Position numbers and translations under genes: made by a program
Source: Dimorphilus gyrociliatus
Taxonomy: Eukaryota > Animalia > Annelida
Assembly (NCBI GenBank): GCA_904063045.1
Contig: CAJFCJ010000005.1
Coordinates: 3,873,689-3,937,688, forward strand
Length of the DNA stretch: 64,000 bases
Direction of reading: 5' to 3'
Shown: positions 145-49,829 of the stretch, in pieces
Layout of the letters: each line of letters starts with the position of its first letter
Numbering within the stretch: position 1 is the stretch's first letter
The notes under the pieces: generated by a model
What the model was told of the DNA's origin: nothing
Database searches by the model: none
The model's input: the letters and a program-made list of their open reading frames with translations, nothing else

Positions 145-3100
145 ATGATGAATAAAACGAAATTTGACGGTCGTTTCTCGGCTCCGCCGTCTACGGATAA
201 AAGAAGATCAAGATTGAACACATGGTCTAGTGGTTTCAATTCGGCAGATATCATTAATGCTAAATATTCGGAGGGGAGTCTCTTCGAATCTTCAGCAAGC
301 TTTCGGTCATCTATTTTTGATGAAGACGAGGAGGATTGTACTGGCAGAAAGAGCAAATCCTCTTTCGTTCAGGGTGACACATCAGAGGTGAGAATATAAA
401 AAGGGAAAACAATTGCAAAAGAAATAAATATAAACACGCCATCTGGTGAAAAATTTGATCTTTAATTATAACTCGATTCGTCAAGTTGAACAAAAGCGGA
501 AGACGAATCTCTCTCTATTCCTTTTACATAGTTGGCTACTTTGCCCTTGATTATTGTATACATAAAATGGATAAGGCGAAGGAAAAAGAGAGGAAAGAGA
601 AAGAGACAAGCAAAAAAAAAAAAGAATTAGAAATATAATCGAAGGGAAAAGGACTTGGAAGGCTGCAAAAACTATCGATCAAAAAGCAATAAGATTCTAA
701 ATTGAACACGGGATGAAGGAGCGTATCAAAAATGGTTCCATATCAACTATAGATTTGATAGTGCTAATGGACGACTTAGCATCGTAATTAGTAAAAGAAT
801 AATGTAAAAATTAATTGTCTTTAGCGTCAAGTGCATCGAATTGTTTATGGTTGACTTAAGATTTAATTAAGCGCGTAGACGTTAAACGTTACCCTCGAGA
901 AACGCTCTCGAGGTCAAGAAAATCTATTCACTTTATTCTTTACTGCAGTTCAGAATGAACGAAATCAGAAAAAATTTATATAATTGGTTTTACAGAGACG
1001 GGGTTCTTCTTATTTTTTTTATATATATCTCAAGTTACACAACTCTTAAGGATTTTATTTATCCGCTCTTTTCGTATTTACAGATCGAAGAATTGATAAA
1101 CATTGAGACGCTTGAAAAACTCTCACAAACATTCCGAAGAGCTGATGAGGATGGATCTGGAGGCTTAGAACTCGATGAATTCAAAAAATTACTTAGAACT
1201 CAATTACATATCCCAACGAATAAAGAAGGTCAAATAGACGCTCTATTTCAAAAGATCGATTGGTCTTCAGAAGGAACAATATCATGGGATGAATTCTGCA
1301 CGTACATGCAATTGGAATATGCGGAGAAAGAAGATTCATACGTCAGAGGTAAGGAGGTATGCCTCCATTTACCAGCCAAAATAGTCAACAGTCCCCATAG
1401 AGAAGCAGTTGTCAGAGTTAGTGATACAACTGATGGAACGTTTATCGTATGCAGTCAGGATGGAAGCGTTAGTTTCTGGACATCTACATTAGAATTAAAA
1501 AGATCTCGCTCAGTAGTAGTAAGTGCCCCTTCTATTTATCTCCTTCTCTCTTTTTTTTTTGGGTAAAATAAGTTATTCGTTTCCCCAATAGCAATCAGAA
1601 AATCCCAGATCGAAACCGAAATGGATTACAGATTTTGTGATTATGAATCAATTTAACAAATTCCTTGTTGGAACCGGCGATAGGGAAATACAATTTTTCG
1701 AATTATCATCCTTTGAACCTTACTGTCAGATTAGCGGTTTAGAAACAATTCCTTTGAAAATTGATTACTGGTATAGGCCTTATCTCTTTTCTAATATTGA
1801 TTCCCTTCAAATTGGTTACAAATTTTTTTTGTTCAATTAAATAGTGCTACCGGCCAGGATGAATGCTTAATTATATGGGGAGATTCGCAAGGTTGCATAA
1901 ATATAATTGTAATAAGCGCAGCTGGTGAATGTTTGAGAACGTGGAAGAAGATGCCGAAAAGAGATGGAATAGCATCCGTTTCTATTGAAGCAGTCGCAAA
2001 GAATTCAAATACTCATTTCCTACGGTGGGTAGCTCACTACGATTGGGTTCAACAAGTCAAGTATTACCATGATCTTCGTCAAGTTATCTCCTGTTCCAAT
2101 AATGCTAGTACAGCCTTAGTAATCGGTAAATTTGTTTATCTAAGTATGTTATTTAGCAATTAAATTTAACTAAATATAATTTCGTGTGTAAAAGGCTGTA
2201 CATCCGGTTCGACTCAGATAGAAATGCAATTAAGGGAGATTAGAGACCCTACCTATGCTCAACTACAGCAAAAGAAAAGAGAAGAATACAATGTAGCACC
2301 CGTAAAGCGATTAGAGGCTGATAAGAATGTATTCAAAGTGTATAAAGGCGTAAAAACGTTCGACTTTTCCAAGCGAAGGAACATTTTAATAACCGGTGGA
2401 ATGGATCGAATTCTAAGAATGTGGAACCCTTACGTTTCATCGTAAGTCTCCAATCAAGGATAATAATATCGAAACATTTGTTTTCAGTGCACCTTTTAAA
2501 AAAATATTAAAATATCATGTACATGTATTTCTCTTCCTTTCTAGGAAACCATCGGCTATGCTTCGAGGTCACAGTGCCCCGATTGTTCATGCTTTTATAG
2601 CGGAGGAAGAAGGGAGAATATTCAGTATTTCGACTGACAAATGCGTCAAAATCTGGGATATTTCAGATCAAAATTGCCTTCTTACAGTTAGAGCCAAAGG
2701 TCATAAGATTCGAGGAGACATTCAAAGCTGTTATTATTCTCCAGTTGCTAAGGCTCTGTGCATAGCAACCGACCAAATGAATTCGCTGCTACTAAAACTA
2801 AGGTGATTTTTATTGAGAGAATTTGTATTTATTTTGTTTATTTATGATAAACAATCTCGTGTGAATAGACCTCAACATCACGCTGACATTCCTGTGACAC
2901 ATAAGGAACCAATCTACGCCATAGTATATAATCCAAACTTTAAGCAGATTATTACAAGCTCAGAATCTTCTGTAATAAAAGTATGGGATATTGAGACTGG
3001 TAATGCTATCTTTGAATATGGAGACGCCCATGGTGACAGCGCGATTACAGCTTTAGCTTTCGATAATACATCCAGGCGTCTATTAAGCGCGGGAAGAGAC

Positions 3101-4784
3101 GGTTGCGTACGGATTTGGAATTACAATAATGGTCATTGCTTGAGAACGCTAAGACGAGAAGACGAAGCTGAAGAATTATGCAGTCTTGCCTATGTTGAAA
3201 TGAATCGAAATCGTTATGTAATCGCTGTTGGTTGGGATAAGCGTATTAATATATTCAGTGACTCGAATGACGATGCTAAAGTTCGTTTGGTACAACATCA
3301 ACAACCTCATTGGAAAGATGATTCGGTTTGTAGCTCTGCAGTCAATAGACACAAATATTTTATTATACTTAATTATCTCCCTTTTCATTAACTAACAGAT
3401 AAACGGTCACACAGATGATATATTATGCGTTGCGCAATGCAAATCTAATTTGATAGCAACGTCTAGTTACGATGGCCAAGTTATCGTATGGAATATGGTC
3501 AGTGGGCATAGATTTTGTAATTTAGTTGCAGATCCACCTCCTGAATATGAAAATAATTGCGGTATATATATATATATTTATATATCTATAAATATAGAAA
3601 AAATTTATATAGATATATAAAACAAACATGCAAATCTAACTTGTCTTTTAATTAAATAGAAACGAAATACACGATAAACGAACTTAGAGAGTCGGGCCAA
3701 TTAAGTGTGAACAAGGTCTGTTTTCTACCCTCTAGATTCGATATGAAAGAGTCAGCATTAGTAATATCTAGTGGACCTTGCGGTTTTCTACATTTCTGGA
3801 ATATTTATCACGGTGGTAAGGTGGCAGCAAGATTCTCTTCTGTAAAATCTCACGAATCTCTAATAACGGCCATGTGCGTTGACAAAAGCGACAAATTAGT
3901 AATTGTGGGTGATAGTAACGGTTTTATTTATCAGTGGAATATAGAGAACTATTGCTTAAATGGTCCAGAAGAAGACGCTGCCGAACGTTGGTTTCCTTTT
4001 CTTAGGTTTTCTTTAGTACAAAGACATACTTAAAAGTGTTTTTTTTTCTTAAACAGTACTACTTAATTGGAGAGCTCATATTGAATGCATTACTAATGTG
4101 GTTCTAGTCGATGAACAAAAGATAATTATTTCGTCTTCTCTCGATTGTACGGTTCGTGTATGGACTATTGAGTCAGGAGACTACGTTGGCACTTTTGGCC
4201 AATCAGAAAATTGGAACATCTACGAACCGAGTACATTTCAACACCCAATGGTTCCATATGACGTTTTAGTCGATCCAATGAGTTTACCGACACATCCGAT
4301 TATTAAGGATAAAGAAAATATGGCCGAAGTGGTTCACGCAGATTCAGCTAGAGAAGATAAGGAAAAACGAGAAAGGGAACTGCAGGCATTTATTCAGTAC
4401 ACTAAGCAGCAGTTTTACGTCGACGATGATACTATCGCGGAACAATTGAAGACAAGGGAATACGCTTCCGGTACCGGTAAAAGGTAATAAAGATGGATAT
4501 ATCGTATATTTATCAATATTTAAAGAATACTAAGAATACGTTTCTAGGAAACACATTCCTCGAAGGTATTTTTCAATTATATTTTCTCTTAATTATTCAG
4601 ATTACGCCACGAAAAATTTAAACCCCTGAGGATAGAACGAGGTGGTCCCAGCGAATATCAGGCGCTAAGAACATACAAAATGGCGACTGACCCAAGTGCG
4701 ACTTTCACGAAAAAATTAACAGAAGCTAAAGACTCTTTGGAAAGCCTCGCCGAAGAAGTATTGACGTCACAAACTGCGCATTAA
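145..4784 (+). CDS. WDR49: EF-hand and WD40-repeat protein, WDR49/WDY-like (about 1066 aa, 11 exons)
   Basis: Exons joined by GT-AG with consistent phases: 145-387, 1084-1518, 1592-1770, 1845-2125, 2195-2441, 2545-2802, 2869-3325, 3399-3561, 3660-3986, 4057-4483, 4601-4784 (sum 3201 nt, in frame to TAA). EF-hand-like loops (DEDGSGGLELDEF; DWSSEGTISWDEF) are followed by many WD repeats (ITGGMDRILRMWN, LLSAGRDGCVRIWN, IATSSYDGQVIVWN). The family call is by recalled similarity. The true first exon could lie upstream of the window. Confidence 0.85.
437..448 (-). promoter_or_regulatory. CTCF-like motif (CACCAGATGGCG on minus strand) in WDR49-like intron 1
   Basis: Matches the CCACCAGATGGCG-type CTCF core. 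One of 10 AGATGGCG occurrences found in the window. Confidence 0.35.
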
Positions 4785-32172: not shown

Positions 32173-35100
32173 ATGCAATTCCATCGAATTCTTCCCAAAT
32201 TGCTTCTCCTGTTAGCCTTTCGAGCGTCTAATGCCGCTAAATGCTCTCTTACAGTCGGTAGGTTACTTTTTATCCTTCGAAGGATTTTCGTTCTCTTTTA
32301 TAAAAATCCTGTACTCTATGGGAGGAATAAGATTAGTCTTGAAGATTAGTAAGTTTCGGATAGAAGCACTATGTAAAAAGAGGAAAATCGCTATAAGGCG
32401 AGACTGTTTATCACCAAAGCAAACAAGGGATTTTCGCTTTCGATGAAAGTTTTTTCAAGACTTTTAAATTAAGCCTAATCGATTTGTAGACGACAACATC
32501 GGTTAAAATGTCTAAATTACAATAAAACGTACAGCATAGACAAACTAAGTGGCAGTTGACTGAAAAAGAGATACATTTTCAGCCTAATTTGTATATTTCC
32601 GACCTCACTAGTATAAGGACAATAGGGTAAAATGTCCTCTCCAACTTTCCGCTCTATAGATTACAAATCCTTTACAGACAACCAACTGTATATTTTGCAA
32701 TATAAGCTGAATATGTTTGTTGTCAAGCGGAATAGAGAGGGTAGACGTCAGTTTGGCTTTTCTCGCGGCTTCATTGTGAGATCTCGGCATGTGCACGTAT
32801 TATGGAAAAAAATAAAAAAAAAGTAAAAAAAAGGGAACACTAACAGTTCTATTTAACATATGAATATCTATATTTATATGAATATAAATACATATATTCA
32901 TATATATTTACACTTATATATGTACGTTACCATACAATAATGTTTATACATGGTATGTAATGTGCATAGTGCACCAGATACGATTCTATTCACTATGTAT
33001 TTAGTATATACACTCTCCAAGACGTATATATGTGTGCATAATTCTATATATTTCGTTTATATTGTACTACAAACAAAGTCTTTCTTTGCGGTTTTTTTTC
33101 TCTGAGCTCTTTGACAGACTATCTCAGATATAAATCATCAGCGACTGCAAGTTGATTAAATGAGAGTCGACTTTTTCTTCACTTCTGTTTCCGCAATAGA
33201 AGAGTTGGCACTTTGACGCCAACGTCTATTTTCGTTCAATATATACTCATCGCTGTTTGCAAACATACTACACGGTCGACGGAATTACGTTTGTCACCAT
33301 CGCGTATATGAGGCGTTATTTTCGTCTTTATTATACAGCTGCAACAATAAATAAATCCCCACAATATACAGTTTTAATTAACAGTTTTTCGTTAAATTTT
33401 TCAGGGGTTCTCAACTCTCCTCTCGGGGAGGGACTATCTTGGGAAAAACTTGCTCAGACGGCTTACAAGGCTCTAAGAAATACGGGTCGTTATGACGTTA
33501 ATTTCAAATTTCAAAACGTTACTTATTGGAGAGAGACGAGCTTCGAAAATTTGAATAGAGGTATTACTTGACGATAATAATGATAATATACAAAAAGTCG
33601 ATATATACAATATACAAGTCTAAATATTCTTAAGAAGCCTACTTTTTCTGTTGTCCTTTCCTTTCTTCCTTGTTCAAACTTCATTTAGCTGTGAAAATAA
33701 AGCATATCAGTGGATCGGGTGTTTGTCTCATTAATTAAAATAGAGAGACGCTCGAGTGGTGATGCTTAAATCGTGAAGATAAACGATACGGTTTAAAAAA
33801 ATAGGAATAGAGATCTTTTTAAAAAGAAACGAGCGTTACTATTCTTTTTAACGGAAGTCTTTTGTATTCGCACGTCTATTTGTACGCTTAACTGGCGAAT
33901 ATGTTTGTAAACGGAGAAGATTGATGTTTTATTGATATCTGATACGTAAGAAAAGTGGAAATTCGATTCAAGATGCTCTTTATGCGTTAGAACGCAAATA
34001 TAGAATTTAGAATTCGAGAGACGCCAAATTTGACGCCGAAAAATATGACAATCTTCCCTTACAAAATTATTTATTCATTTGTTGTATAATAATGAAATTT
34101 ATTAATTTAATGATTTCAGCTCACGCTGAGATAGGATCTGGTGGGTATGACGCCCTAATCGGACCGTATAGCTATGTAAATGCAATAGCAGCAGCTACTA
34201 AAGATTTTAGTGTACCTTTTTTTACGACGCCTGTAGCCAGTTCACTAATGCAAGTTAGTTATTACTTTCTTAAAAAAGGGAAGTGTGTAATGAATTTTCA
34301 CCTCGGCTTGATAACAATTATATTTGTGCAGTGGAAGGAGAACTCCTTGTCAATCCTACCCGATCAGTCGGATCAGGCGGAAGTCACGCTACAATTAGTT
34401 CGCCAATACAAATGGACCGAATTAGCTGTACTTTACGAACGCGATTTGGGTAAGGGACCTTCTGCATGCAAAAATCTTTCCCCTTCCCCTCTCTCATAAT
34501 CCATTTTTCCCCTATATTTACTATGCCTTATTCGTTCTAACTGCCAGCTACAAGTTTAAACAAGAATAGGTCTATCTCTCTGCTATATAATATAAACTGT
34601 AGATAGTACATGTACAAATATATATATAAATGACATATACGGTATTTATATAGATATGGATTGTATAAATTAGTTTCTATTATTCATTTTATACTCTGTC
34701 ACTATATGTCTACTTGTTTCGCATCTCTTCTCATCCCCCATTCCCCCCTTCACACGCTTCCTTCTCTCTTTACTATTGATTGTCCTTACCCTAATCAATT
34801 TCTGTTCTCGGCCTCACAGGAACAGATTTTATCGAAGTATTCGTGCAAGAAGCGGATTTGCACGTGCGTTCTTGGAGGGTAGAAGAGTCGTTTACCAAAC
34901 TTCTAATAAAAAAGAAATTGCTGGCTATAAGGAACATGTCTGTTACGAAAATCATAGTTCTCGCATCGGCGAATTGCACAAATCGAATCCTAGAGGAGGT
35001 AATTTTTTTATGGTCATAAATATTAATTAGTTCTTATTACTTTGACCATGATGTTGATTGATTTAAAAACAGGTAAAAAAACAAAAACAAAATGCTATAT

Positions 35101-38100
35101 ATACTGTATATACATACTGTATATACGGTATACTGTATATATATATATACTATAAAGATAGAAAATATAGAAATGGATAGGTTTTATTCCTACTTTATCT
35201 TATTATCTTCCAATAAGGTTTTAGTCAGATTTTTCTATTAATGTCTTTATACGAATTTTTCTCGTCGACAGGCTTTGCATTTGAGTATGCTGTCACACAA
35301 ATATTCGTGGATTCTACCGATTTTTGTAAGTATTGAGAGACATATGCTAAATATAGTATCGTTAGCGTATGTAATTATAGCAATTTCTACTCCCCTGATA
35401 CTCATTCCAGAACGTTCTCCTTCTCGCATCTTTGATCATCCGTGTTCCGCTCTAATTTATTCTTTATTATAAGTAATTACATACCTTTTATATTTAACCT
35501 TAGAAATTATCGAAGTATTAACAATAAATCTCGTTTAAGGGTTATATTTACGGAAATTACCAAACATATTTCAACAGACCGATTTCCCCCAAGGGTAAAC
35601 GATTGGAGCGATTAATTTAAAATTATCCCTATTCACCCTTTTAACTAATTCATTGTGCTTTCTTTTTTATATTATTACTAATTAATAATTAACTTTTAAA
35701 GTATATCTAATTAAGAAAATTAATTTTTTTCCTCCTCATCAGGATCATTCTAAGCTTAAACTGGCGAAAATTGTTGATACACAAGTCAACCTAACAACTT
35801 TTCAGCTAATAAGCCGAACCGACACGGCAAACTACGATCCGTTGCAGTTCGCGACGGTCTACGACAGTTTGCAATTACTTTCAGACGTTTCGCTCAAGGT
35901 TCTCAGCGGTGAAAGAGTTTGTAAATGGAAAATGCAGTTTCTTGACAGTTTGTTTTTATTTTGATTTTAACCTGATCGTCTTACTCGTATGTCTTGTCTT
36001 TTAATCCGATTATTGGAATTTTATGTTCCGCTCTATAAAATACTAACAGAAGCAAATTTACTCCATCCTCCCACCCTCTACGCCCCTTTTTTAATTTTTT
36101 TTTATCTTTTATTGATTTTTTTCTATAGCTATCGTTCGACCCTGTGAGGCATACCCCCCTCCCTCCTGTTTACTCTCTCCCGCTCATGTGTGTCAAACTC
36201 CTCACCGCTCGCCCCCATGCTCCCTCCCCCTGCCGTCAATCTGCACGCCTCCTTTCTCTATTTAGTGTTACAAACCTTTTTGTCTACTTCATTTATTTGT
36301 AGTTGTTTAAACAAGATAGTCTATTTGATAGAAATCAAGCCGACAGATGGTGCTACCGGTCCCATGTCTTTCGACTCGCAGGGAAGGAGGAGAGTGTATA
36401 ATTTGGACGTTCTAGCTTTAGATGATAGATCGAGAACAACGTCTAAATTAACAAAGATAGGAGTTTGGAAGAGAAATCGACGAGAAAAGACTCTAAAGTT
36501 AAGGAAGCTTAATAGGGGATCAGACAATGTCAAGCATAAATTAGGTCAAAGGACAATAAGCGTCGCTGTTTTTCCGGTAAATAGAGAGAGCAAACATTAC
36601 TGAAATATTATTGATCTTTCGTTTTTTTTTTTTAAAATACCAATTTAATTTCCTGAAAGGAACCACCTTTCATCGAAGAAGTAACAAATGGGGGTAAAAC
36701 ACGGTTCCAAGGTTACCTAATTGACCTGATGGATGAACTAGGAAAAGAGTTAGGCTTTGATTACATTCCAAGAAGGGTCCAACCCCTGGGATCTAGTAGT
36801 GTTGAAGATAGATTAACGGAGGAGATAGCGAACGGGGTACTGTATTCTCAGGTTGAGATATAAGCTAAGCTAATAGGATTATCTTGTAGAATGCCGTCTT
36901 CGCCCTATATCCTTTCGTGGAGAATACATCTCCGCTTACGGACGAGAGCATTCCTTATATGTTCTTTGGTATATCAGCTTTGTTGAGAAAGAAATTTCCT
37001 AGTCCTGGTATTCTACACCTGATTAAACCTTTAACAGCGGCCGCCTGGTGCCTACTAGTCGCAATTGCGGCCGTATTTAGCATCGGCCTATATTTCGTTG
37101 ATAGGTTTACACCAAAACAAAGTGATGGAGTTAAGAGATTGACTGCCCTGGACGCCATCTGGTTTGTTTTTTCCTGGATGATTATTGTTGGCACTTCGCA
37201 AACCTCAACAAAAAGTATGGGCTCTCGGATCCTCTCAGCTTGTCTATGGATATTTACTTTGTCACTCTTCAGTGCATATGTAGCTTCGTTAGTAACAGCT
37301 ATGATGGCAGATCGGCCCCTCCCACTTCCTTCTTCAATGGCTGAACTTGCAGCCTCAGATTCCTATAAGGTTGGATTTGTTCAAGGGTCAGCCCTATCGT
37401 ATATTTTACAAAGGTCCGAATTGGCTCACATGAAAACATTAGGTAGAAGATTAATTCGCTTTCGCAATAAAAAAGCAGCATTAGACAAAATTGCTACGGA
37501 CGATTTTGCCTTTATCGGAGAATCTCCATCCATACAGCATTTGACACGCTTAGATTGTTCACTTGTAGAGATACGGAGTAATTTTTATGATAAGTCTTAT
37601 GTAATTCCCATGGTAAAAGGTGCACAATTTAAAAATGACGTTGATAAAGTAATTAAGCGTTTATGGAGTGAAGGTAAACTTCAAGAACTGTACGAACGTT
37701 GGTGGTCCCCGTTAATCTGCGGCGGTAAATCCGAAATTAATCATTGGCAACTTGGTGCTAAAGAAATAGCTAGTGGTTTGGGTCTATTAAGTGCTGGTAT
37801 GGTTCTAGCCGCTTCTACGACCTTTGCCAGATTCTACTTGGAAAAGAATAAAAGAAACACCAAGAAAAGCCTCAAAAGAGTATGAGATTTTTAAAAATAC
37901 TTTAATATTCTGTTTCTCTTCTGCATATTTTATTGTTAATCATCTTCTCTTTTCCTTCCTCAGCGCAAACCGGATAAGAGCCCATCCTCTAAGCCTTTAT
38001 GTGCCGCAGATGGAGCTCCAAGCGCCAACAGCTCCAGATTCCAATTATCCGATCAAGATAAATCGCCAACTACAGAATTTCTGTCAACCTCTTCGTCGCC

Positions 38101-44197: not shown

Positions 44198-45270
44198 ATG
44201 GAGTCGTTTCAACGAAGGTAAGATTTTTAATTTCTTTTTTTTTCCGTATAGTTTAATTCTTTCGTTTCATAATTACTTTTCTACTTTTGTCAAAAGAGAA
44301 AAGTAATGAGAGTAAGGCGCGCCAAGTTTTTCAAAGATAAATTTACAGTATATATATATATATATATATATTTCTTTAAGGTTTATATTAAACATAACAC
44401 AGAATTAAATAAAATTGCATACACTACTTTTATATTTACTCTTAATATTAAAAAGAAGAAGAAGAAGTAAAAGAAGATGAAGAAGAGTGTATAATATACT
44501 TATTTCTACTTTTAATAGTTGAAAATAATTGTTCTTCTGTTTTTTTAATAGAAAATTCCAAGGGTTAACGTAATAAAAGCAATGTTGTCTTTATCCAAAA
44601 ATTTATTAGACAGTAGCAGGTGGTAGAAATGTCTGAGAGCGGAAGTTTGCCTAATCCGATTGCAACGTCAACAAGAAACGTTCAAAGATTCTAGTAGTTA
44701 GATCCACTTTGTTTATAATTAATTTCTATTTTTCTAAACAAATGTTAAATATACATTGGGTATATATATACTGTATATATGTATATACAGGTAATTATAG
44801 AGATATTAATAAAGGCGATTATATACTAATTCATTAATTAATTATCCTATTACCTAGTACATAGTTTAATTTTATAACTACTTTTCTTTGTATTTAGTCT
44901 ATTTTTTACCATCTTCTTAATACTTTTGTTAGAATAAGAAATAACAATCTTTCCATTGAATAACGTGATCTAATGAAAAAAATTATTTTCCAGGATGTTA
45001 CTCAATGTAATCCTCTTGATCCTTTTGACAAACTGCGTCACTAAGGGGGAAAAGAGGCAACCTCACCTATCGGTTGACGCCCACTTACAATCAATAGCCG
45101 ATATGCTGGGAAATCCAAGAAAGGTAGAAGAAACTAATGGTATGAAGGCCTGGCTTAACAGATTAGGTAAACGTTGGATCAATACACCCCAGTTAAACCG
45201 TAATGAGGACGGTTTTGAAGGATTTAATGAGCAATTCAAGAAAAGAAAACTTCTACAAGATGTGTATTGA
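44198..45270 (+). CDS. CRH/DH44/egg-laying-hormone family neuropeptide precursor
   Basis: Exon 44198-44217 (MESFQR) splices in frame (AG|gtaaga...ccag|G) to 44994-45270. Signal peptide MLLNVILLILLTNC, a KR site, then a 36-aa peptide QPHLSVDAHLQSIADMLGNPRKVEETNGMKAWLNRL followed by GKR (amidation). The LSxxxxLxxxxDML pattern is typical of ELH/DH44. Confidence 0.85.
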
Positions 45271-45980
45271 CATTACCATTATTTATCATAACTTCTCATT
45301 TAATATTCAACTAAAGAAAATTAATTAATGAAAACAAATACATTATTACTAATCTTTAAATATCAAGTATGAATAAATTTATTCACTAATTAAGATATAT
45401 CTTAAAAGGAGGAAAACAAATAGAAAAGGCAAATTGGCAAACAGGGAAAATAGTCGAAGAAGATAGGAACACCGGGATAGAGAGAGAGGGAGGGGAGGAG
45501 ATGTGGCGGGAGGGGGGTGGGGCAGAGAGAGAGAGAGAGAGAGAGAGAGAAACTTTAACAAAAAGTAAAGAGGAAAAAAGAAGAAAGAATTGAAAAATTA
45601 TGAAAATGAAAAATCGCTTTGAATTCATATTCTTTTCATTTTTTTTGCTTTTTTTTGCAACTGACTGTGTTTCTTGCTACCTTTTTTTAAAATGACTCAA
45701 TATTCAGCATTGAAGAGATAGACAGTAGCAGCCTTTCATAACTTGTTATATCTTCTTATTTTATTTAAAAATAGAAATCTATTTATATATGTATATATAA
45801 AGTAATTCAAATGCTGTAAAATCTTCATTCCTATTCAGAATCTTGCTCTCTCCGCTCCTCTCTGTCTCTCTCTTTCTCTCTCTTTTGTAATAATAATTCA
45901 ACACAACGAACTTTTAAATACAAGTTTACCTCTTAAGACAATGAACAACTATCTATACAGCTTATATACAGCATATTACA

Positions 45981-47349
45981 CTATATTAAATAAAATGGAT
46001 ATATTATTACAATAGTTGTAATAGTATAGATAGTTTGGAATGTCCAGAACGGGCTTGTTGCGCCATCTACCGGTCTTTCTAATTTATATTCTGTCGGAAG
46101 CATTCTAGTTGGTATGGGAGTTTTTGCACAGTCCCTATCAGGCCACCATCTTTTGAAAAGACGCTTCAGGAAATGTTTACTTTTTAGGATTCTTAATATA
46201 TCATTTAAGCATTTAGTTAAAGGTGATTTATGACGAAGAATTAGGCAGTATTTAAGCTCCGGTCCAATTTGAAAGTCCAACAGTCTTAGATCGCAATGGT
46301 TTCTTACATGCCATTCGGCAAATGGAGATTCAATAAAAAATACAAATGTGCCGTTAGATGAGAGAACTTTAGCAACACCCTCTTGAGCTGAACGAACGAA
46401 GGTATCCTCTTGGTTCATGACTTTCCACATACGACGGCAAAGAGGGTTATTACCCGATCTAAAGAAACGCTCCGTATATGAACCCTTAATGACGCCATAG
46501 GTTATTGGTGTCTTAGAGTCAACTTCTATCAGGTCAGATAGGTCCTTGATTTCCGCAAGGCCCGAGTAAAGGGCGGCTATTTTCGCCTTCATAAACGGTA
46601 TAGTAAAATCCACATACTTTTCCCTAAAGGCTAAACGAGTAATTGGGGCAGCACCGACGTCATGTACCTGATAAAACTGAGAGCTAATACCCAGCTTAAA
46701 AGAATTTAATTAAATGACTAACACTATCTATTACTTCTCCTATTATTCCATTCCAAGTGCCATCTGGTTTTGGCCATCCGTATCCGCCTTCACTAACTCT
46801 CTTTATACGGAACGGAAGCTGGAAACAAGTATGCAAATACGTATATAAGCTTAAAGTACAAAAATAAATCAATAGGGGTCATTAGATTAATGCATCTATT
46901 TTTGTTAATATTTCCTACAGGCGACAACCTGTAAATATTTCGCTATTTTTTCCACCAAGTCAGGGATGAAGCCTTCGACGATAAATGGTTCAGTACCCTT
47001 ACTGTCAGATATGATGCGAAAAAATGGTGGCTCTTCTAAAGAAACGAATGTTAAATACCAATGTAAGTCGTTTGATGCCGTTGGTTTGCCATCTGTGTGG
47101 GAAAAAATACGACAATATGTATTTTCTCATCTATAATCGATATTAATCGATATGGACTTAGACAGGGTAAAGGGGGTGGAAAGAGGGGTTTTTAGCCTGA
47201 AGGGACACCCCAATGGTCTGTTGTAGCAGGTGATATTTTATTCCGGACAAAACTTGATTTAGCGCTTTGTTAAGGGTAGCGATTGAATTAGTCTAGGAGC
47301 ATAACAAACTGGAGTATATACACGGCGTATATAACGATAAAGAGACCAT
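45981..47349 (-). CDS. Pore-less iGluR ligand-binding-domain protein (S1 fused directly to S2) with GPI-anchor-like C-terminus (about 328 aa)
   Basis: Exons 47349-47310 (tentative signal exon), 47092-46929, 46818-46723 and 46667-45981 are phase-consistent. S1: EEPPFF..EGFIPDL..IA, GYG..DGTWNGIIGEV, DVGAAPITRLAFREKYVDFTIPFM. Linker SGLAE. S2: IKDLSDL, YGVIKGSYTERFF, FVFFIESPFAE, HCDL, RWWPDRDC. No M1-M3 segment; hydrophobic C-terminal tail ending at the stop. Confidence 0.88.
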
Positions 47350-48161
47350 AAGTAAGGGTAGAGAGAATAGAGAAAGACACTATTTAAATATACAAGAGAC
47401 GACGTCCTGCCATATTCCATAACGTTTTTTCCATCGCCGATTCTCTTTGCGCTAGACTGCCCATTCGCTTTATAACTGTCGTCCACCTGCAACCTCGTCG
47501 AAAAAGAGATGCCAGTGGAAAATCAAAAGAGAATAAAGAGAAGGATAAAATATGGCAGAGAGTAAACGAGCGAGTTAGAAAGGGAGCTGGAATTGAAGGG
47601 GATATAGTAGAAGGTGTTATACTTTATCGCTGTACATTTGCAACGGATTAAGCTCGTTGATCGTTCCATACATTTTTACCGATTCGATAAATTCGAATAT
47701 AAATACGGAGAGAATTAGGGAACGAACGAGCAAACAAGCGGCGAATTTTCCGGCGATGTTCTCCTGGGCAATTTGTCTACGCTTTCTACTTTGCTTGTCT
47801 TTTTATTTTCGACCGCTTCCATCTCAATCGAATAAACACGTCAAGGACAGACATACATGCTAAAACATACGCGGTAAGAAAGGCAAAAAGTATGAGCAGT
47901 TATTACTTTCCCTTTGTTTTCTTATATCAAATTGAATTCTTCTTTGTATTATTTCAATCCTTTACCTTTCTATAACCTATCATTCGCCCCACTTTTTCAT
48001 TTTCTAAGCAACCTACGACTTTTAATCAGGCGTCAAATTGAATAATTATACTCCGGAGGCTCACCTTTTAGATCATTTAAACTACAACCAAAACTTCCAT
48101 CTAAAAAGACTTTCGTAAAACAATTAAGCAAATATATTAAAATTTTCCATTCCATATCTTT

Positions 48162-48199
<38 letters not shown>

Positions 48200-48635
48200 T
48201 TCTTTATATCCTTTACATATGCAATGTCTATTTCCCCTTATCTTTCCCTATTCTTTATTTCTTTTTACGCTATCTATCTCTATATATGTTCATTACGAAG
48301 TTATCCTTCTCCTCTCCTCTTTTCTTCTTTCTTCTTCGTCTTCTTTGCCGTTTTCCTCGCTGTCTTTAACTTCAACGTCAAGTTTACGTTATTTTTTCGC
48401 TCCTACCTCTTAATATATTTCCTTTCTTTATATATATTTAAAGTCAGAAAATAGTTGCCTGTCTCTTTTAAACTGTTAATAATATCCAATCTTCTTGTAA
48501 GAATTAATAGAGGAATAGTGCTAAAATGAATAATTCCGATTAGACAACTGTAATACTCCTTATAAAAGTGACAATTTTCTTTTTTCGCTCTCGTTTTTTA
48601 CGAATTATCATAAAGATTGGTAGAAGGAGCAAACC

Positions 48636-48648
48636 CGCCATCTATTGG
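48636..48648 (-). promoter_or_regulatory. CTCF-like motif CCAATAGATGGCG, intergenic
   Basis: Close match to the CCA-N-TAGATGGCG CTCF core. Confidence 0.4.
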
Positions 48649-49829
48649 TTGATAGTCTATTTTATAGTAATAAAGTCCACTTACAGGGCTTTTCATCCCC
48701 TCTTAGCGATGGCCTCATTACGAAACGTTATGAAAGGAGAGATAAGAAATTGTAATTCTTTTTGACAATTATAAGGGATGAAATTCGGTTAAGAATTCTC
48801 GCTAGCAAAAATAAATATGTATTATTCATTAGTAAGAAAATTATTGATGATTTTATAGAATTGAATGGATTAACACCTTTACTAATGGAATAATAAGGTA
48901 ATCTACAAATAAAACGTAACGGTCTTATAGGATGGAATTTTTTGAATGCAAAAGTAAACATTCCTTTCCTGTTCAAACTTCTTACTGAGTTTTAATAAAT
49001 AAATTCATTTATATTCTACGATCGACAATAAGATAAAGAAAAGATTGAAGATTTTTTGATAATGATATCTTGTTGTTCTTCTTTTTATATTCTTCAGTAT
49101 ATTCTCAAAATCGTTTAAAGAAAAGAAAAAGCGCTGTTAATCTCCTATATTTTAATTGATATTTATTTATCATCCGTAGCCTTATCTTTAGTTTTCCAAC
49201 TGATTATAGTTTATTATAAGATAAATTGCAGAGGAGTAGTCTCTCAGAATTAAACAACTGATAGTGCTCAAATAATACACACATACTATATTCAGTATTC
49301 TTGCAGTATATGGCCTTGCTGACGTTTTGAGGAAGTGAAGAATTCTTTTATTCGAAAATAAGTGGAAAACAGACATATCAGTTACTTTTTGCGTGTTATT
49401 AATATTAGTATCACTTGCTTAAGATTATAGATAGGGCTATAACATGCCAATAGAGGGTATATATGTGAATTATTATGGTACTTATCCTCCCTATACATCT
49501 TGTAAAGTCAATCAGGCGAGTGATGAAATTCTCCGACTTAATTATGACCGTATCGTACTATTTGTTACGATAAGAGTTCGGTGAGATAAATATAGAATAA
49601 TTTATATGAATATCTTCCATGATCATTATGATAATTAGATATCATTCAAGAGAATTTGTGGCTCTTTTATTATTAATCTCGTATTACTTTGAAATAAAAT
49701 CTCTGGAGGAAGTCAAGCTGACAAAATTGTATTTGCCTTTTGAATGATTTGAAAGAACTTAACGATTGGCGTAGGCAGTAAAGCCACTCTGTCAGAACAA
49801 GTGAAAATCATTGAAAGTGTAGAGAAAGG

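What the first reader, a model, noticed from the sequence alone, without database searches (positions are those of the whole stretch)
45981..47349. Natural pore-less 'S1S2' glutamate-receptor ligand-binding protein with a GPI-anchor-like tail
Seen: the end of S1 (DFTIPFMKAKIAALY) is joined to the start of S2 (IKDLSDL..YGVIKGS) by only 5 residues (SGLAE, 46565-46551) in the middle of one 687-nt exon. The roughly 130-aa M1-P-M3 channel is therefore absent from the genome here, not spliced out. There is no amino-terminal domain. Agonist-contact positions of AMPA receptors (GluA2 Y450, P478, T480, R485, S654, E705) all have counterparts (YG, APITR, FREK, GSY, IES), and both S2 disulfide cysteines are kept. 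The C-terminus reads D-G-A, a polar spacer, then a hydrophobic tail with no following charge, which fits a GPI-attachment signal. Established: this architecture mirrors the engineered S1S2 crystallography construct and is conceptually like molluscan AChBP for nicotinic receptors. Inference: a cell-surface or shed amino-acid/glutamate-binding protein acting as a synaptic buffer, decoy, chemosensory carrier or co-receptor.
Basis: partly seen in the sequence, partly recalled or inferred. Interest (0 to 1): 0.9.

Follow-up and report, generated by a model that had tools for sequence, protein, structure and literature searches.

The report
Channel-less glutamate-receptor binding-domain gene
This marine worm has a real, expressed and conserved gene that makes only the ligand-gripping clamshell of a glutamate-receptor channel, with a secretion signal, a membrane-anchor-like tail and no pore, and I found no paper describing the large family it belongs to.

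Summary
The core observation holds. On the minus strand, one exon (46667-45981) joins the end of S1 (PFMKAKIAALY) to the start of S2 (IKDLSDL) through five residues, SGLAE (46565-46551). M1-P-M3 is absent from the DNA. A 100%-identical spliced RNA contig and relatives' transcripts read straight through the junction.

Two corrections:
The true start is the ATG at 48155, which gives a 4-exon, 345-aa protein: signal-like N-terminus, ligand-binding domain (LBD), hydrophobic tail, no amino-terminal domain.
- The GluA2 S654 counterpart is Tyr, not Ser. The R/T/E alpha-amino-acid triad is kept.

An ortholog in a related species is also 345 aa with the same exons. dN/dS is 0.11 over the LBD. Its tail diverges right after a conserved D-G-A, as expected for a GPI signal.

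The exon-4 model (pLDDT 88) superposes on engineered S1S2 crystal constructs at about 2 Å.

Of the 149 best library hits, 84 also lack the pore. One is an engineered construct; one is a Capitella teleta gene sharing an intron position with this gene.

Literature searches found no description of such proteins. This scan had already flagged sister genes elsewhere in this genome. GPI anchoring, the ligand and the function remain inferred.

The parts
48156..48585 (-). 5' UTR of exon 1, including a (GA)n run at about 48160-48209
   Evidence: RNA contigs 23 and 24 of run X5 have similar depth (68 and 72). An in-frame stop lies 17 codons upstream of the ATG. Continuity across the GA repeat was not shown directly.
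48065..48155 (-). Exon 1 coding part: ATG and a signal-peptide-like N-terminus (MEWKILIYLLNCFTKVFL...); the donor GT follows at 48064
   Evidence: RNA joint 47092|48065 in X5 (same species) and in X2 (a relative). Sequence read. The MEWKIL start is conserved in L001.
47093..48064 (-). Intron 1 (GT..AG).
46929..47092 (-). Exon 2: start of S1 (LTFVSLEEPPFF...EGFIPDLVEKIAKYLQ)
   Evidence: Spliced RNA contig; conserved in that reading frame in L001.
46723..46818 (-). Exon 3: S1 middle, with GGYGWP (Y98, the Y450 counterpart) and WNGIIGEVI
45981..46667 (-). Exon 4 coding part: end of S1, 5-residue junction, all of S2, linker, tail, and stop TAG at 45983-45981
   Evidence: AlphaFold model pLDDT 88. 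Foldseek matches to S1S2 crystal structures at rmsd about 2 Å.
46551..46565 (-). S1-S2 junction SGLAE (aa 152-156), where M1-P-M3 would sit
   Evidence: Contiguous in the DNA and in RNA contigs of X5, X1, X2 and X3. Reads SGLTE in the ortholog.
46059..46067 (-). D-G-A (aa 318-320), candidate GPI omega site
   Evidence: RP[VA]DGA is conserved between the orthologs, and sequence similarity ends immediately after it. GPI attachment is an inference.
45984..46058 (-). C-terminal 25 residues: polar spacer, then a hydrophobic tail with no following charge
   Evidence: Hydropathy; modelled as a helix; sits where M4 lies in channel-bearing relatives.
45561..45980 (-). 3' UTR
   Evidence: RNA contig 23 continues down to 45561.

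Best explanation
The gene spans 48155-45981 on the minus strand, with 4 coding exons and 345 aa. It encodes a secretory-pathway protein that is only the ligand-binding clamshell (S1S2) of a non-NMDA-type ionotropic glutamate receptor.

Shown:
- An ancestral in-exon loss removed M1-P-M3, so the protein cannot form a channel.
- It is transcribed, correctly spliced, and kept by purifying selection.

Inferred:
- After signal-peptide cleavage, the domain faces the outside of the cell.
- It is held on the membrane by its C-terminal tail, most likely through a GPI anchor added at the conserved D-G-A. The tail sits where M4 sits in channel subunits and probably descends from it.
- The residues that clamp the alpha-carboxylate (R132), the alpha-amino group (E230) and the ligand backbone (P125, T127, T182) are kept. 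The likely ligand is therefore a free alpha-amino acid or a close analogue. The Tyr at the S654 position makes plain glutamate selectivity uncertain.
- The most likely action is ligand capture at the cell surface without ion flux. That could mean a local buffer or decoy, or a ligand-presenting co-receptor for a signalling partner.

The gene is one member of a large family of pore-less binding-domain proteins in annelids and other invertebrates.
For: Architecture:
- S1 and S2 are joined in one exon.
- The exon aligns in one stretch to engineered S1S2 constructs.
- No PF00060 Lig_chan match; only sub-threshold SBP_bac_3 and Lig_chan-Glu_bd matches.
- The exon-4 model has pLDDT 88 and pTM 0.77. 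It matches KaiR1D, GluRIIB, GluK and GluA2 LBD crystals at E about 5e-18 and rmsd 1.8-2.5 Å over about 178 residues.

Expression and splicing:
- A 1525-nt contig of run X5 is 100% identical to the window and joins exactly the four exons at GT..AG introns.
- Relatives' contigs (X2, X3) and a marine metatranscriptome (X1) also cross the junction.

Selection:
- The ortholog on L001 has the same four exons and the same length of 345 aa.
- dN/dS is 0.17 over the whole protein and 0.11 over the LBD, with dS about 1. Differences by codon position are 65, 56 and 137.

Anchor:
- D-G-A is conserved, followed by a completely diverged but still hydrophobic tail. The ortholog's hydrophobic run is about 13 residues.
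- About 41 of 83 pore-less relatives end in a similar hydrophobic tail.

Ligand site: across 64 pore-less sequences, the counterparts of R485, T655 and E705 are R in 59, T in 53 and E in 55. Both cysteines are kept in 63.

Family:
- 84 of the 149 best library hits have a PFM-to-YG distance under 60 aa. One of them is an engineered construct. The other 59 scorable hits mostly show 104-170 aa.
- Capitella teleta P0017 carries SBP_bac_3 and Lig_chan-Glu_bd with no Lig_chan. It shares the intron position before the ADVA motif, and its final exon also fuses S1 to S2.
- In the tree, this gene and its ortholog sit inside a 28-member pore-less group.
Against: - No ligand-binding, localisation or GPI experiment exists. 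SignalP, NetGPI and PredGPI could not be run.
- The signal peptide's hydrophobic core is short and interrupted by Lys15.
- In the window species the tail is 22 residues and is modelled as a confident helix, so a transmembrane anchor is possible.
- Tyr at the S654 position and a conserved extra pair of cysteines (C188, C257) may have reshaped the pocket.
- Only exon 4 (aa 118-345) could be folded. The spliced protein has no reference, so lobe 1 was not modelled.
- The tissue of expression is unknown.
- The tree was a quick search with many weak branches.
Confidence: 0.78

Rival explanations
1. Same channel-less binding protein, but anchored as a type I membrane protein by a surviving M4-derived transmembrane helix rather than by a GPI anchor.
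For: The tail lies where M4 lies in channel-bearing relatives (sequences). In the window species it is 22 residues long, and AlphaFold models it as a helix with pLDDT about 94.
Against: No cytosolic residues or positive anchor follow it. The ortholog's uninterrupted hydrophobic run is only about 13 residues and its spacer holds two Lys. Sequence conservation stops exactly after a D-G-A triplet typical of omega sites. Many relatives have textbook GPI-like ends.
Confidence: 0.28
2. A ligand-sensing half of a split receptor. The free LBD docks in trans onto channel subunits that cannot bind agonist themselves, for example the iGluR-like gene at about 32173-37885, and gates them.
For: The window does hold a full-length iGluR-like gene (ORF 36917-37885 with M1-M3 and M4). 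Scan note s1-084659 proposes such a pairing.
Against: The two are only 20% identical over S2, so neither is a recent derivative of the other. At least three other genes lie between them, and the two point towards each other. The family has dozens of members with no such neighbour known. There is no co-expression or interaction data.
Confidence: 0.08
3. A decaying gene fragment or pseudogene left by a partial deletion, with no function.
For: It arose by loss of an essential part of a channel. Pfam domain scores are below the curated cut-offs.
Against: The ORF is intact at 345 aa in two species with dS about 1. dN/dS is 0.11 in the LBD, and the excess of third-position changes is clear. Spliced mRNA was found in four runs. 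The binding triad and the disulfide cysteines are conserved.
Confidence: 0.02
4. A horizontally acquired bacterial periplasmic amino-acid-binding protein (SBP_bac_3) rather than a receptor derivative.
For: It has the same fold and the same contiguous S1-S2-like order. Pfam SBP_bac_3 scores as well as Lig_chan-Glu_bd. IMG names one relative an ABC-type amino-acid transport substrate-binding protein.
Against: The 60 listed PDB sequence hits and the 50 listed fold hits are all animal iGluR LBDs. The gene has three spliceosomal introns, one shared with Capitella. It carries the iGluR-specific WW...C motif and disulfide pair. Its nearest channel-bearing relatives are animal iGluRs.
Confidence: 0.01

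Closest known systems
Engineered S1S2 ligand-binding cores of GluA2, GluK1/2/4 and Drosophila KaiR1D (e.g. PDB 1FTJ, 5DTB, 5IKB)
   Same: S1 is joined to S2 by a short linker with no pore and no ATD. Sequence alignment runs in one stretch (2e-19), and the folds superpose at about 2 Å.
   Different: Those are laboratory constructs cut from channel subunits. This one is a natural gene with its own signal peptide, membrane-anchor tail, introns and orthologs. One such construct (P0093) sits in the protein library and must not be counted as natural.
Molluscan acetylcholine-binding protein (AChBP)
   Same: By analogy only (my own knowledge): the extracellular ligand-binding domain of a ligand-gated channel family, made as a separate channel-less secreted protein.
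   Different: An unrelated fold (Cys-loop). AChBP is a soluble pentamer shown to bind ACh and modulate synapses. Here nothing is known about oligomer state, ligand or physiology, and the protein is probably tethered to the membrane.
Bacterial periplasmic and lipoprotein amino-acid-binding proteins (Pfam SBP_bac_3, e.g. GlnH)
   Same: Same clamshell fold, contiguous order of the two lobes, and no channel. Gram-positive versions are lipid-tethered, much as a GPI anchor would tether this one.
   Different: This gene is of animal iGluR descent: best hits, WW...C motif, disulfide pair and introns. No ABC transporter partner is implied.
Frog, chick and fish kainate-binding proteins, and ATD-less iGluR/IR subunits (400-500 aa)
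   Same: They lack the amino-terminal domain. ATD-less channel subunits of 400-500 aa are among the nearest channel-bearing relatives.
   Different: They keep M1-P-M3 and M4. This protein does not.
Schistosoma mansoni SmGBP, a truncated metabotropic glutamate receptor (PMC3206071)
   Same: A natural invertebrate protein that keeps a glutamate-receptor binding module and lacks the transmembrane signalling part.
   Different: It derives from class C GPCR Venus-flytrap modules, not from ionotropic receptors.
Uncharacterised pore-less LBD proteins: Capitella teleta P0017, P0005/P0152, and sister genes in this genome (scan notes s1-080265, s1-080335, s1-080258, s1-080361)
   Same: Same architecture, a shared intron position, S1 fused to S2 in the last exon, and the same tree group.
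   Different: Only about 28-36% identical. This gene and its ortholog sit on a long branch (1.24). It has a shorter stalk (48 aa after the last Cys, against 79-102 aa) and a Tyr at the S654 position.

Membership tests
Ionotropic glutamate receptor (channel subunit) | Bilobed S1S2 ligand-binding domain of iGluR type | tested here: met
   phmmer to S1S2 structures at 2e-19. Foldseek E 5e-18 and rmsd about 2 Å. Lobe 1's N-terminal part (exons 2-3) was judged by motifs only.
Ionotropic glutamate receptor (channel subunit) | Pore module M1-P loop-M3 between S1 and S2 | tested here: not met
   32 residues separate the F of the PFM motif from the Y of the YG motif, against mostly 104-170 in channel-bearing relatives. 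No internal hydrophobic segment. No PF00060 hit. RNA is contiguous across the site.
Ionotropic glutamate receptor (channel subunit) | M4 helix followed by a cytoplasmic tail | tested here: inconclusive
   A hydrophobic tail sits at the M4 position, but the protein ends there with no cytoplasmic residues.
Natural pore-less iGluR LBD proteins (family not found in the literature searched) | Signal peptide, contiguous S1-S2, conserved Cys pair, no ATD, length about 260-360 aa | tested here: met
   345 aa. Groups with pore-less sequences, including Capitella P0017, at aLRT 89. Intron position shared with P0017.
Natural pore-less iGluR LBD proteins (family not found in the literature searched) | Alpha-amino-acid clamp: Arg (R485 position), Thr (T655 position), Glu (E705 position) | tested here: met
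   R132, T182 and E230 are present. Family conservation is 59, 53 and 55 of 64.
GPI-anchored proteins | N-terminal signal peptide | tested here: inconclusive
   MEWK followed by a hydrophobic stretch, conserved in the ortholog. Judged by eye and hydropathy only; no SignalP.
GPI-anchored proteins | Small omega, omega+1 and omega+2 residues, a polar spacer, then a C-terminal hydrophobic run with nothing after it | tested here: met
   D318-G-A, a 9-residue spacer and a 16-residue hydrophobic end. The ortholog has D-G-A, a 10-residue spacer and a 13-residue run. Homology stops after D-G-A. This was a rule-of-thumb inspection, not a trained predictor.
GPI-anchored proteins | Actual lipid anchor (PI-PLC release, mass spectrometry) | not testable with these tools
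   Needs an experiment.
Bacterial SBP_bac_3 periplasmic binding proteins | Closest sequence kin are bacterial SBPs, with no introns | tested here: not met
   The 60 listed PDB sequence hits and the 50 listed fold hits are all animal iGluR LBDs. Three GT-AG introns.

The most novel reading that the evidence does not exclude
The family is the glutamate-receptor counterpart of AChBP. These would be GPI-anchored or shed binding domains that invertebrate cells display to capture amino-acid transmitters or chemosensory cues. They might then shape signalling, or hand the ligand or their own closed-cleft conformation in trans to ligand-blind channel subunits or other receptors. That would be a previously unrecognised layer of amino-acid signalling built from receptor parts.
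Probability: 0.2. Interest if true: 0.9.

Novelty: new variant of a known kind. Interest (0 to 1): 0.68.

Why it matters
Structural biologists have cut the S1S2 core out of glutamate receptors by hand for decades. Here evolution made the same cut and kept it under selection. It did so in dozens of 50%-identity clusters, at least some from annelids and probably arthropods, and many from marine metatranscriptomes.

If these proteins bind amino acids at the cell surface, they are a new class of players in invertebrate glutamatergic or chemosensory signalling, acting as buffers, decoys or co-receptors. They would also be natural, soluble-by-design binding cores useful for ligand discovery and biosensors.

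They also matter for annotation. iGluR and IR repertoire surveys that filter on the channel domain will miss them, and surveys that do not will miscount them as receptors.

Tried and rejected
Rejected. It lies in intron 1, the ATG is absent in the ortholog, and a net one-base indel between the species breaks the frame.
- **ATG at 47090 directly after the acceptor.** Wrong frame; it stops after 13 codons (read).
- **Recent tandem duplicate of the neighbouring full-length iGluR-like gene.** Rejected: 20% identity over S2. tblastn found no other paralog in the window.
- **Pfam on exon 4.** Only sub-threshold hits.
- **PDB sequence search with exon 2 alone (54 aa).** Nothing meaningful.
- **Word-indexed homolog search restricted to 126-400 aa.** Found only the window's own ORF and one ortholog. 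The exhaustive representative search was needed to see the family.
- **Names for ten relatives.** None was informative.
- **Rfam on 45000-49000.** Nothing for the conserved intronic blocks. Single-strand folds were unremarkable, z -0.8 and -2.5.
- **Literature.** Seven full-text searches and two papers checked gave no description of pore-less iGluR binding-domain proteins. Subscription-only papers are not covered.
- **Full-length (spliced) structure prediction, SignalP, NetGPI.** Not possible.

Full report
**What is in the sequence**

The window is AT-rich animal DNA, about 28-40% GC per 2-kb window. On the minus strand, the ORF 46613-45981 and the frame upstream of it read:
- the end of an iGluR S1 segment (VHDVGAAPITRLAFREKYVDFTIPFMKAKIAALY)
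- five residues, SGLAE
- the start of S2 (IKDLSDLIEVDSKTPITYGVIKGSYTERFF...FFIESPFAEW...HCDL...KRWWPDRDC)
- a 48-residue C-terminal stretch ending in a hydrophobic tail and a stop

The M1-P-M3 module of roughly 105-140 residues found in channel subunits is simply not there.

phmmer against all PDB chains aligns this exon in one stretch, residues 4-180, to the engineered S1S2 constructs. These are Drosophila KaiR1D (2e-19), GluK4 and many GluA2 cores. The alignment runs straight across their artificial linkers.

**Gene model**

One call of read laying settled the gene model. A 1525-nt contig of run X5 has no mismatches to the window and depth 68. It joins 48065|47092, 46929|46818 and 46723|46667, then runs on to about 45561. 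All three skipped parts are GT..AG introns on the minus strand.

A contig from a related organism (X2) has the same three joints. Contigs from X3 and from a marine metatranscriptome (X1, one mismatch) also cross the S1-S2 junction without any insertion.

The coding sequence is therefore 48155-48065, 47092-46929, 46818-46723 and 46667-45981. That is 1038 nt and 345 aa.

The start codon at 48155 is preceded by an in-frame stop 17 codons upstream, and the ortholog also has one shortly upstream. No amino-terminal domain can therefore be hiding upstream.

The N-terminus (MEWKILIYLLNCFTKVFL...) looks like a signal peptide. This was judged by eye and hydropathy only.

Its ATG is not conserved, and a net one-base indel between the species breaks the frame.

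**Is the gene alive?**

The word-indexed search found one ortholog fragment, P0002, at 80% identity. It lies on an 11.4-kb Logan contig, L001.

The whole locus aligns. The same four exons give a protein of exactly 345 aa.

| Measure | Value |
|---|---|
| Amino-acid identity | 72.5% |
| Differences by codon position 1 / 2 / 3 | 65 / 56 / 137 |
| dN/dS, whole protein | 0.17 |
| dN/dS, LBD (aa 31-297) | 0.11 |
| dS | about 1 |

Taken with the spliced mRNA, this rules out a pseudogene.

**Fold**

The spliced protein has no reference, so I folded only exon 4 (aa 118-345), using an alignment of 64 pore-less sequences. The model has mean pLDDT 88 and pTM 0.77.

Foldseek against the PDB returns only iGluR ligand-binding cores at the top: KaiR1D, GluRIIB, GluK1/2/4 and GluA2. 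E-values are about 5e-18 and rmsd 1.8-2.5 Å over about 178 residues. The natural five-residue junction is therefore compatible with the clamshell fold.

**Binding site**

I mapped residues through the KaiR1D alignment and my own knowledge of GluA2 S1S2J numbering.

| GluA2 residue | Counterpart here |
|---|---|
| Y450 | Y98 |
| P478 | P125 |
| T480 | T127 |
| R485 | R132 |
| T655 | T182 |
| E705 | E230 |
| C718 / C773 | C242 / C297 |
| S654 | Y181 (Tyr, not Ser) |

Across 64 pore-less sequences, the Arg is kept in 59, the Thr in 53, the Glu in 55 and each Cys in 63. The S654 position is variable.

The clamp for an alpha-amino acid is thus preserved, but side-chain selectivity cannot be read from the sequence. 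Two further cysteines, C188 and C257, are conserved between the orthologs.

**C-terminus**

After C297 comes a 20-residue linker, then D-G-A (aa 318-320). A 9-residue spacer follows, then 16 hydrophobic residues, and then the stop.

In the ortholog, RP[VA]DGA is conserved and similarity ends right behind it. Its tail has a 10-residue spacer containing two Lys, and a hydrophobic run of only about 13 residues.

A conserved small-residue triplet, followed by a freely diverging but still hydrophobic end, is what a cleaved GPI signal would give. Thirteen residues is too short for a membrane-spanning helix.

Against this, the window's tail is 22 residues long, is modelled as a confident helix, and sits where M4 sits in channel subunits. 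My estimate is about 60-65% for a GPI anchor and about 30% for a transmembrane anchor. No GPI predictor was available.

**Family**

The exhaustive search of 1.84 billion representatives gave 967 hits at E <= 1e-3. I measured the distance from the F of the PFM motif to the Y of the YG motif in the best 149 hits.
- 84 have under 60 residues (mostly 29-41; this gene has 32). They lack the pore.
- 59 have 60 or more (mostly 104-170). They have the pore.
- 6 could not be scored.

One "pore-less" hit, P0093, is plainly an engineered GluA S1S2 construct and must be discounted. Many of the others are complete ORFs of 260-330 aa with clear signal peptides. About 41 end in a hydrophobic tail, and about 19 stop within 15 residues of the last Cys.

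Two sit as contiguous ORFs or exons in genome assemblies. P0152 is in GCA_022702835.1. P0017 is in GCA_000328365.1, which I recognise from memory as Capitella teleta. P0017's precomputed Pfam families are SBP_bac_3 and Lig_chan-Glu_bd, without Lig_chan.

P0017's gene has an intron at the same place as intron 3 here (EVIRG|EADVA against EVIDS|VHDVG), and its last exon also fuses S1 to S2.

I built a quick maximum-likelihood tree of 102 LBDs with the pore segments cut out. It puts this gene and its ortholog on a long branch, with P0005, P0025, P0006 and P0017 (aLRT 89), inside a group of 28 pore-less sequences that also holds 2 channel-bearing ones. The pore-less state needs at least 4 (starred branches only) to 8 changes on the tree. 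The pore was therefore probably lost more than once, though the backbone is weak.

The ESM Atlas places the nearest clusters in Arthropoda and Annelida.

**Context**

The full-length iGluR-like gene at about 32173-37885 on the plus strand is only 20% identical over S2. Several other genes separate it from this one, and the window holds no other paralog. I see no support for a special pairing of the two.

**Literature**

I ran seven full-text searches and checked two papers. No description of natural channel-less iGluR binding-domain proteins turned up.

The nearest concept found is SmGBP, a truncated metabotropic receptor of Schistosoma (PMC3206071). Paywalled literature is not covered.

This scan has already reported sister genes on other DNA of the same genome (s1-080265, s1-080335, s1-080258, s1-080361). 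Their follow-ups reached the same reading, so this is a further paralog and not a first sighting.

**Verdict**

The gene is functional by evolutionary and expression criteria.

It is not an iGluR channel subunit, because the pore is absent. It is an iGluR-derived, probably GPI-anchored, extracellular amino-acid-binding protein. Its ligand, anchor chemistry and physiological role remain inferences.

Noticed in passing
window 47588-47869 and 47150-47527 (inside intron 1, minus-strand gene): Two non-coding blocks are 93% (283 nt) and about 88% identical to the related species' contig L001. Synonymous sites of the flanking exons are near saturation (dS about 1). There is no Rfam match, no RNA depth in run X5, and only weak folding signal (z -0.8 and -2.5). 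This could be a conserved regulatory element or an unknown RNA; it remains unexplained.
   Followed up: partly
window 44995-45270 (+): A 91-aa ORF has a signal-peptide-like start and dibasic and Gly-Lys-Arg sites. RNA depth is very high (about 790 in X5), it is conserved in three relatives' runs, and it is spliced to an upstream exon at 44992. It looks like a secreted peptide or neuropeptide precursor, lying convergent with the 3' end of the LBD gene.
   Followed up: no
protein library hit P0093; ESM Atlas cluster 'Glutamate receptor kainate-like protein' (261 aa, Chordata): An engineered GluA S1S2 crystallography construct (258 aa, ending NKWWYDKGEC) sits among the 'natural' representatives. 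The chordate Atlas cluster is probably the same kind of entry. Counts of natural pore-less proteins must exclude such synthetic sequences.
   Followed up: partly
L004 (Capitella teleta KB297234.1) 3001-4078: An annotated 342-aa hypothetical protein (P0017) has the same pore-less architecture, an intron at the same position as intron 3 here, and a long Asp/Glu-rich stalk before a hydrophobic end. The family has therefore sat in a genome published in 2013 (date from my own recollection), apparently without comment.
   Followed up: partly
window 48160-48209 (-): A (GA)n microsatellite lies in the 5' UTR directly upstream of the start codon. It broke the RNA assembly into two contigs.
   Followed up: no
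window 32173-37885 (+): A full-length iGluR-like gene has its last exon (36917-37885) carrying M1-M3, S2 and M4 together. This is the same exon layout as the pore-less gene's last exon, but the two are only 20% identical over S2.
   Followed up: partly
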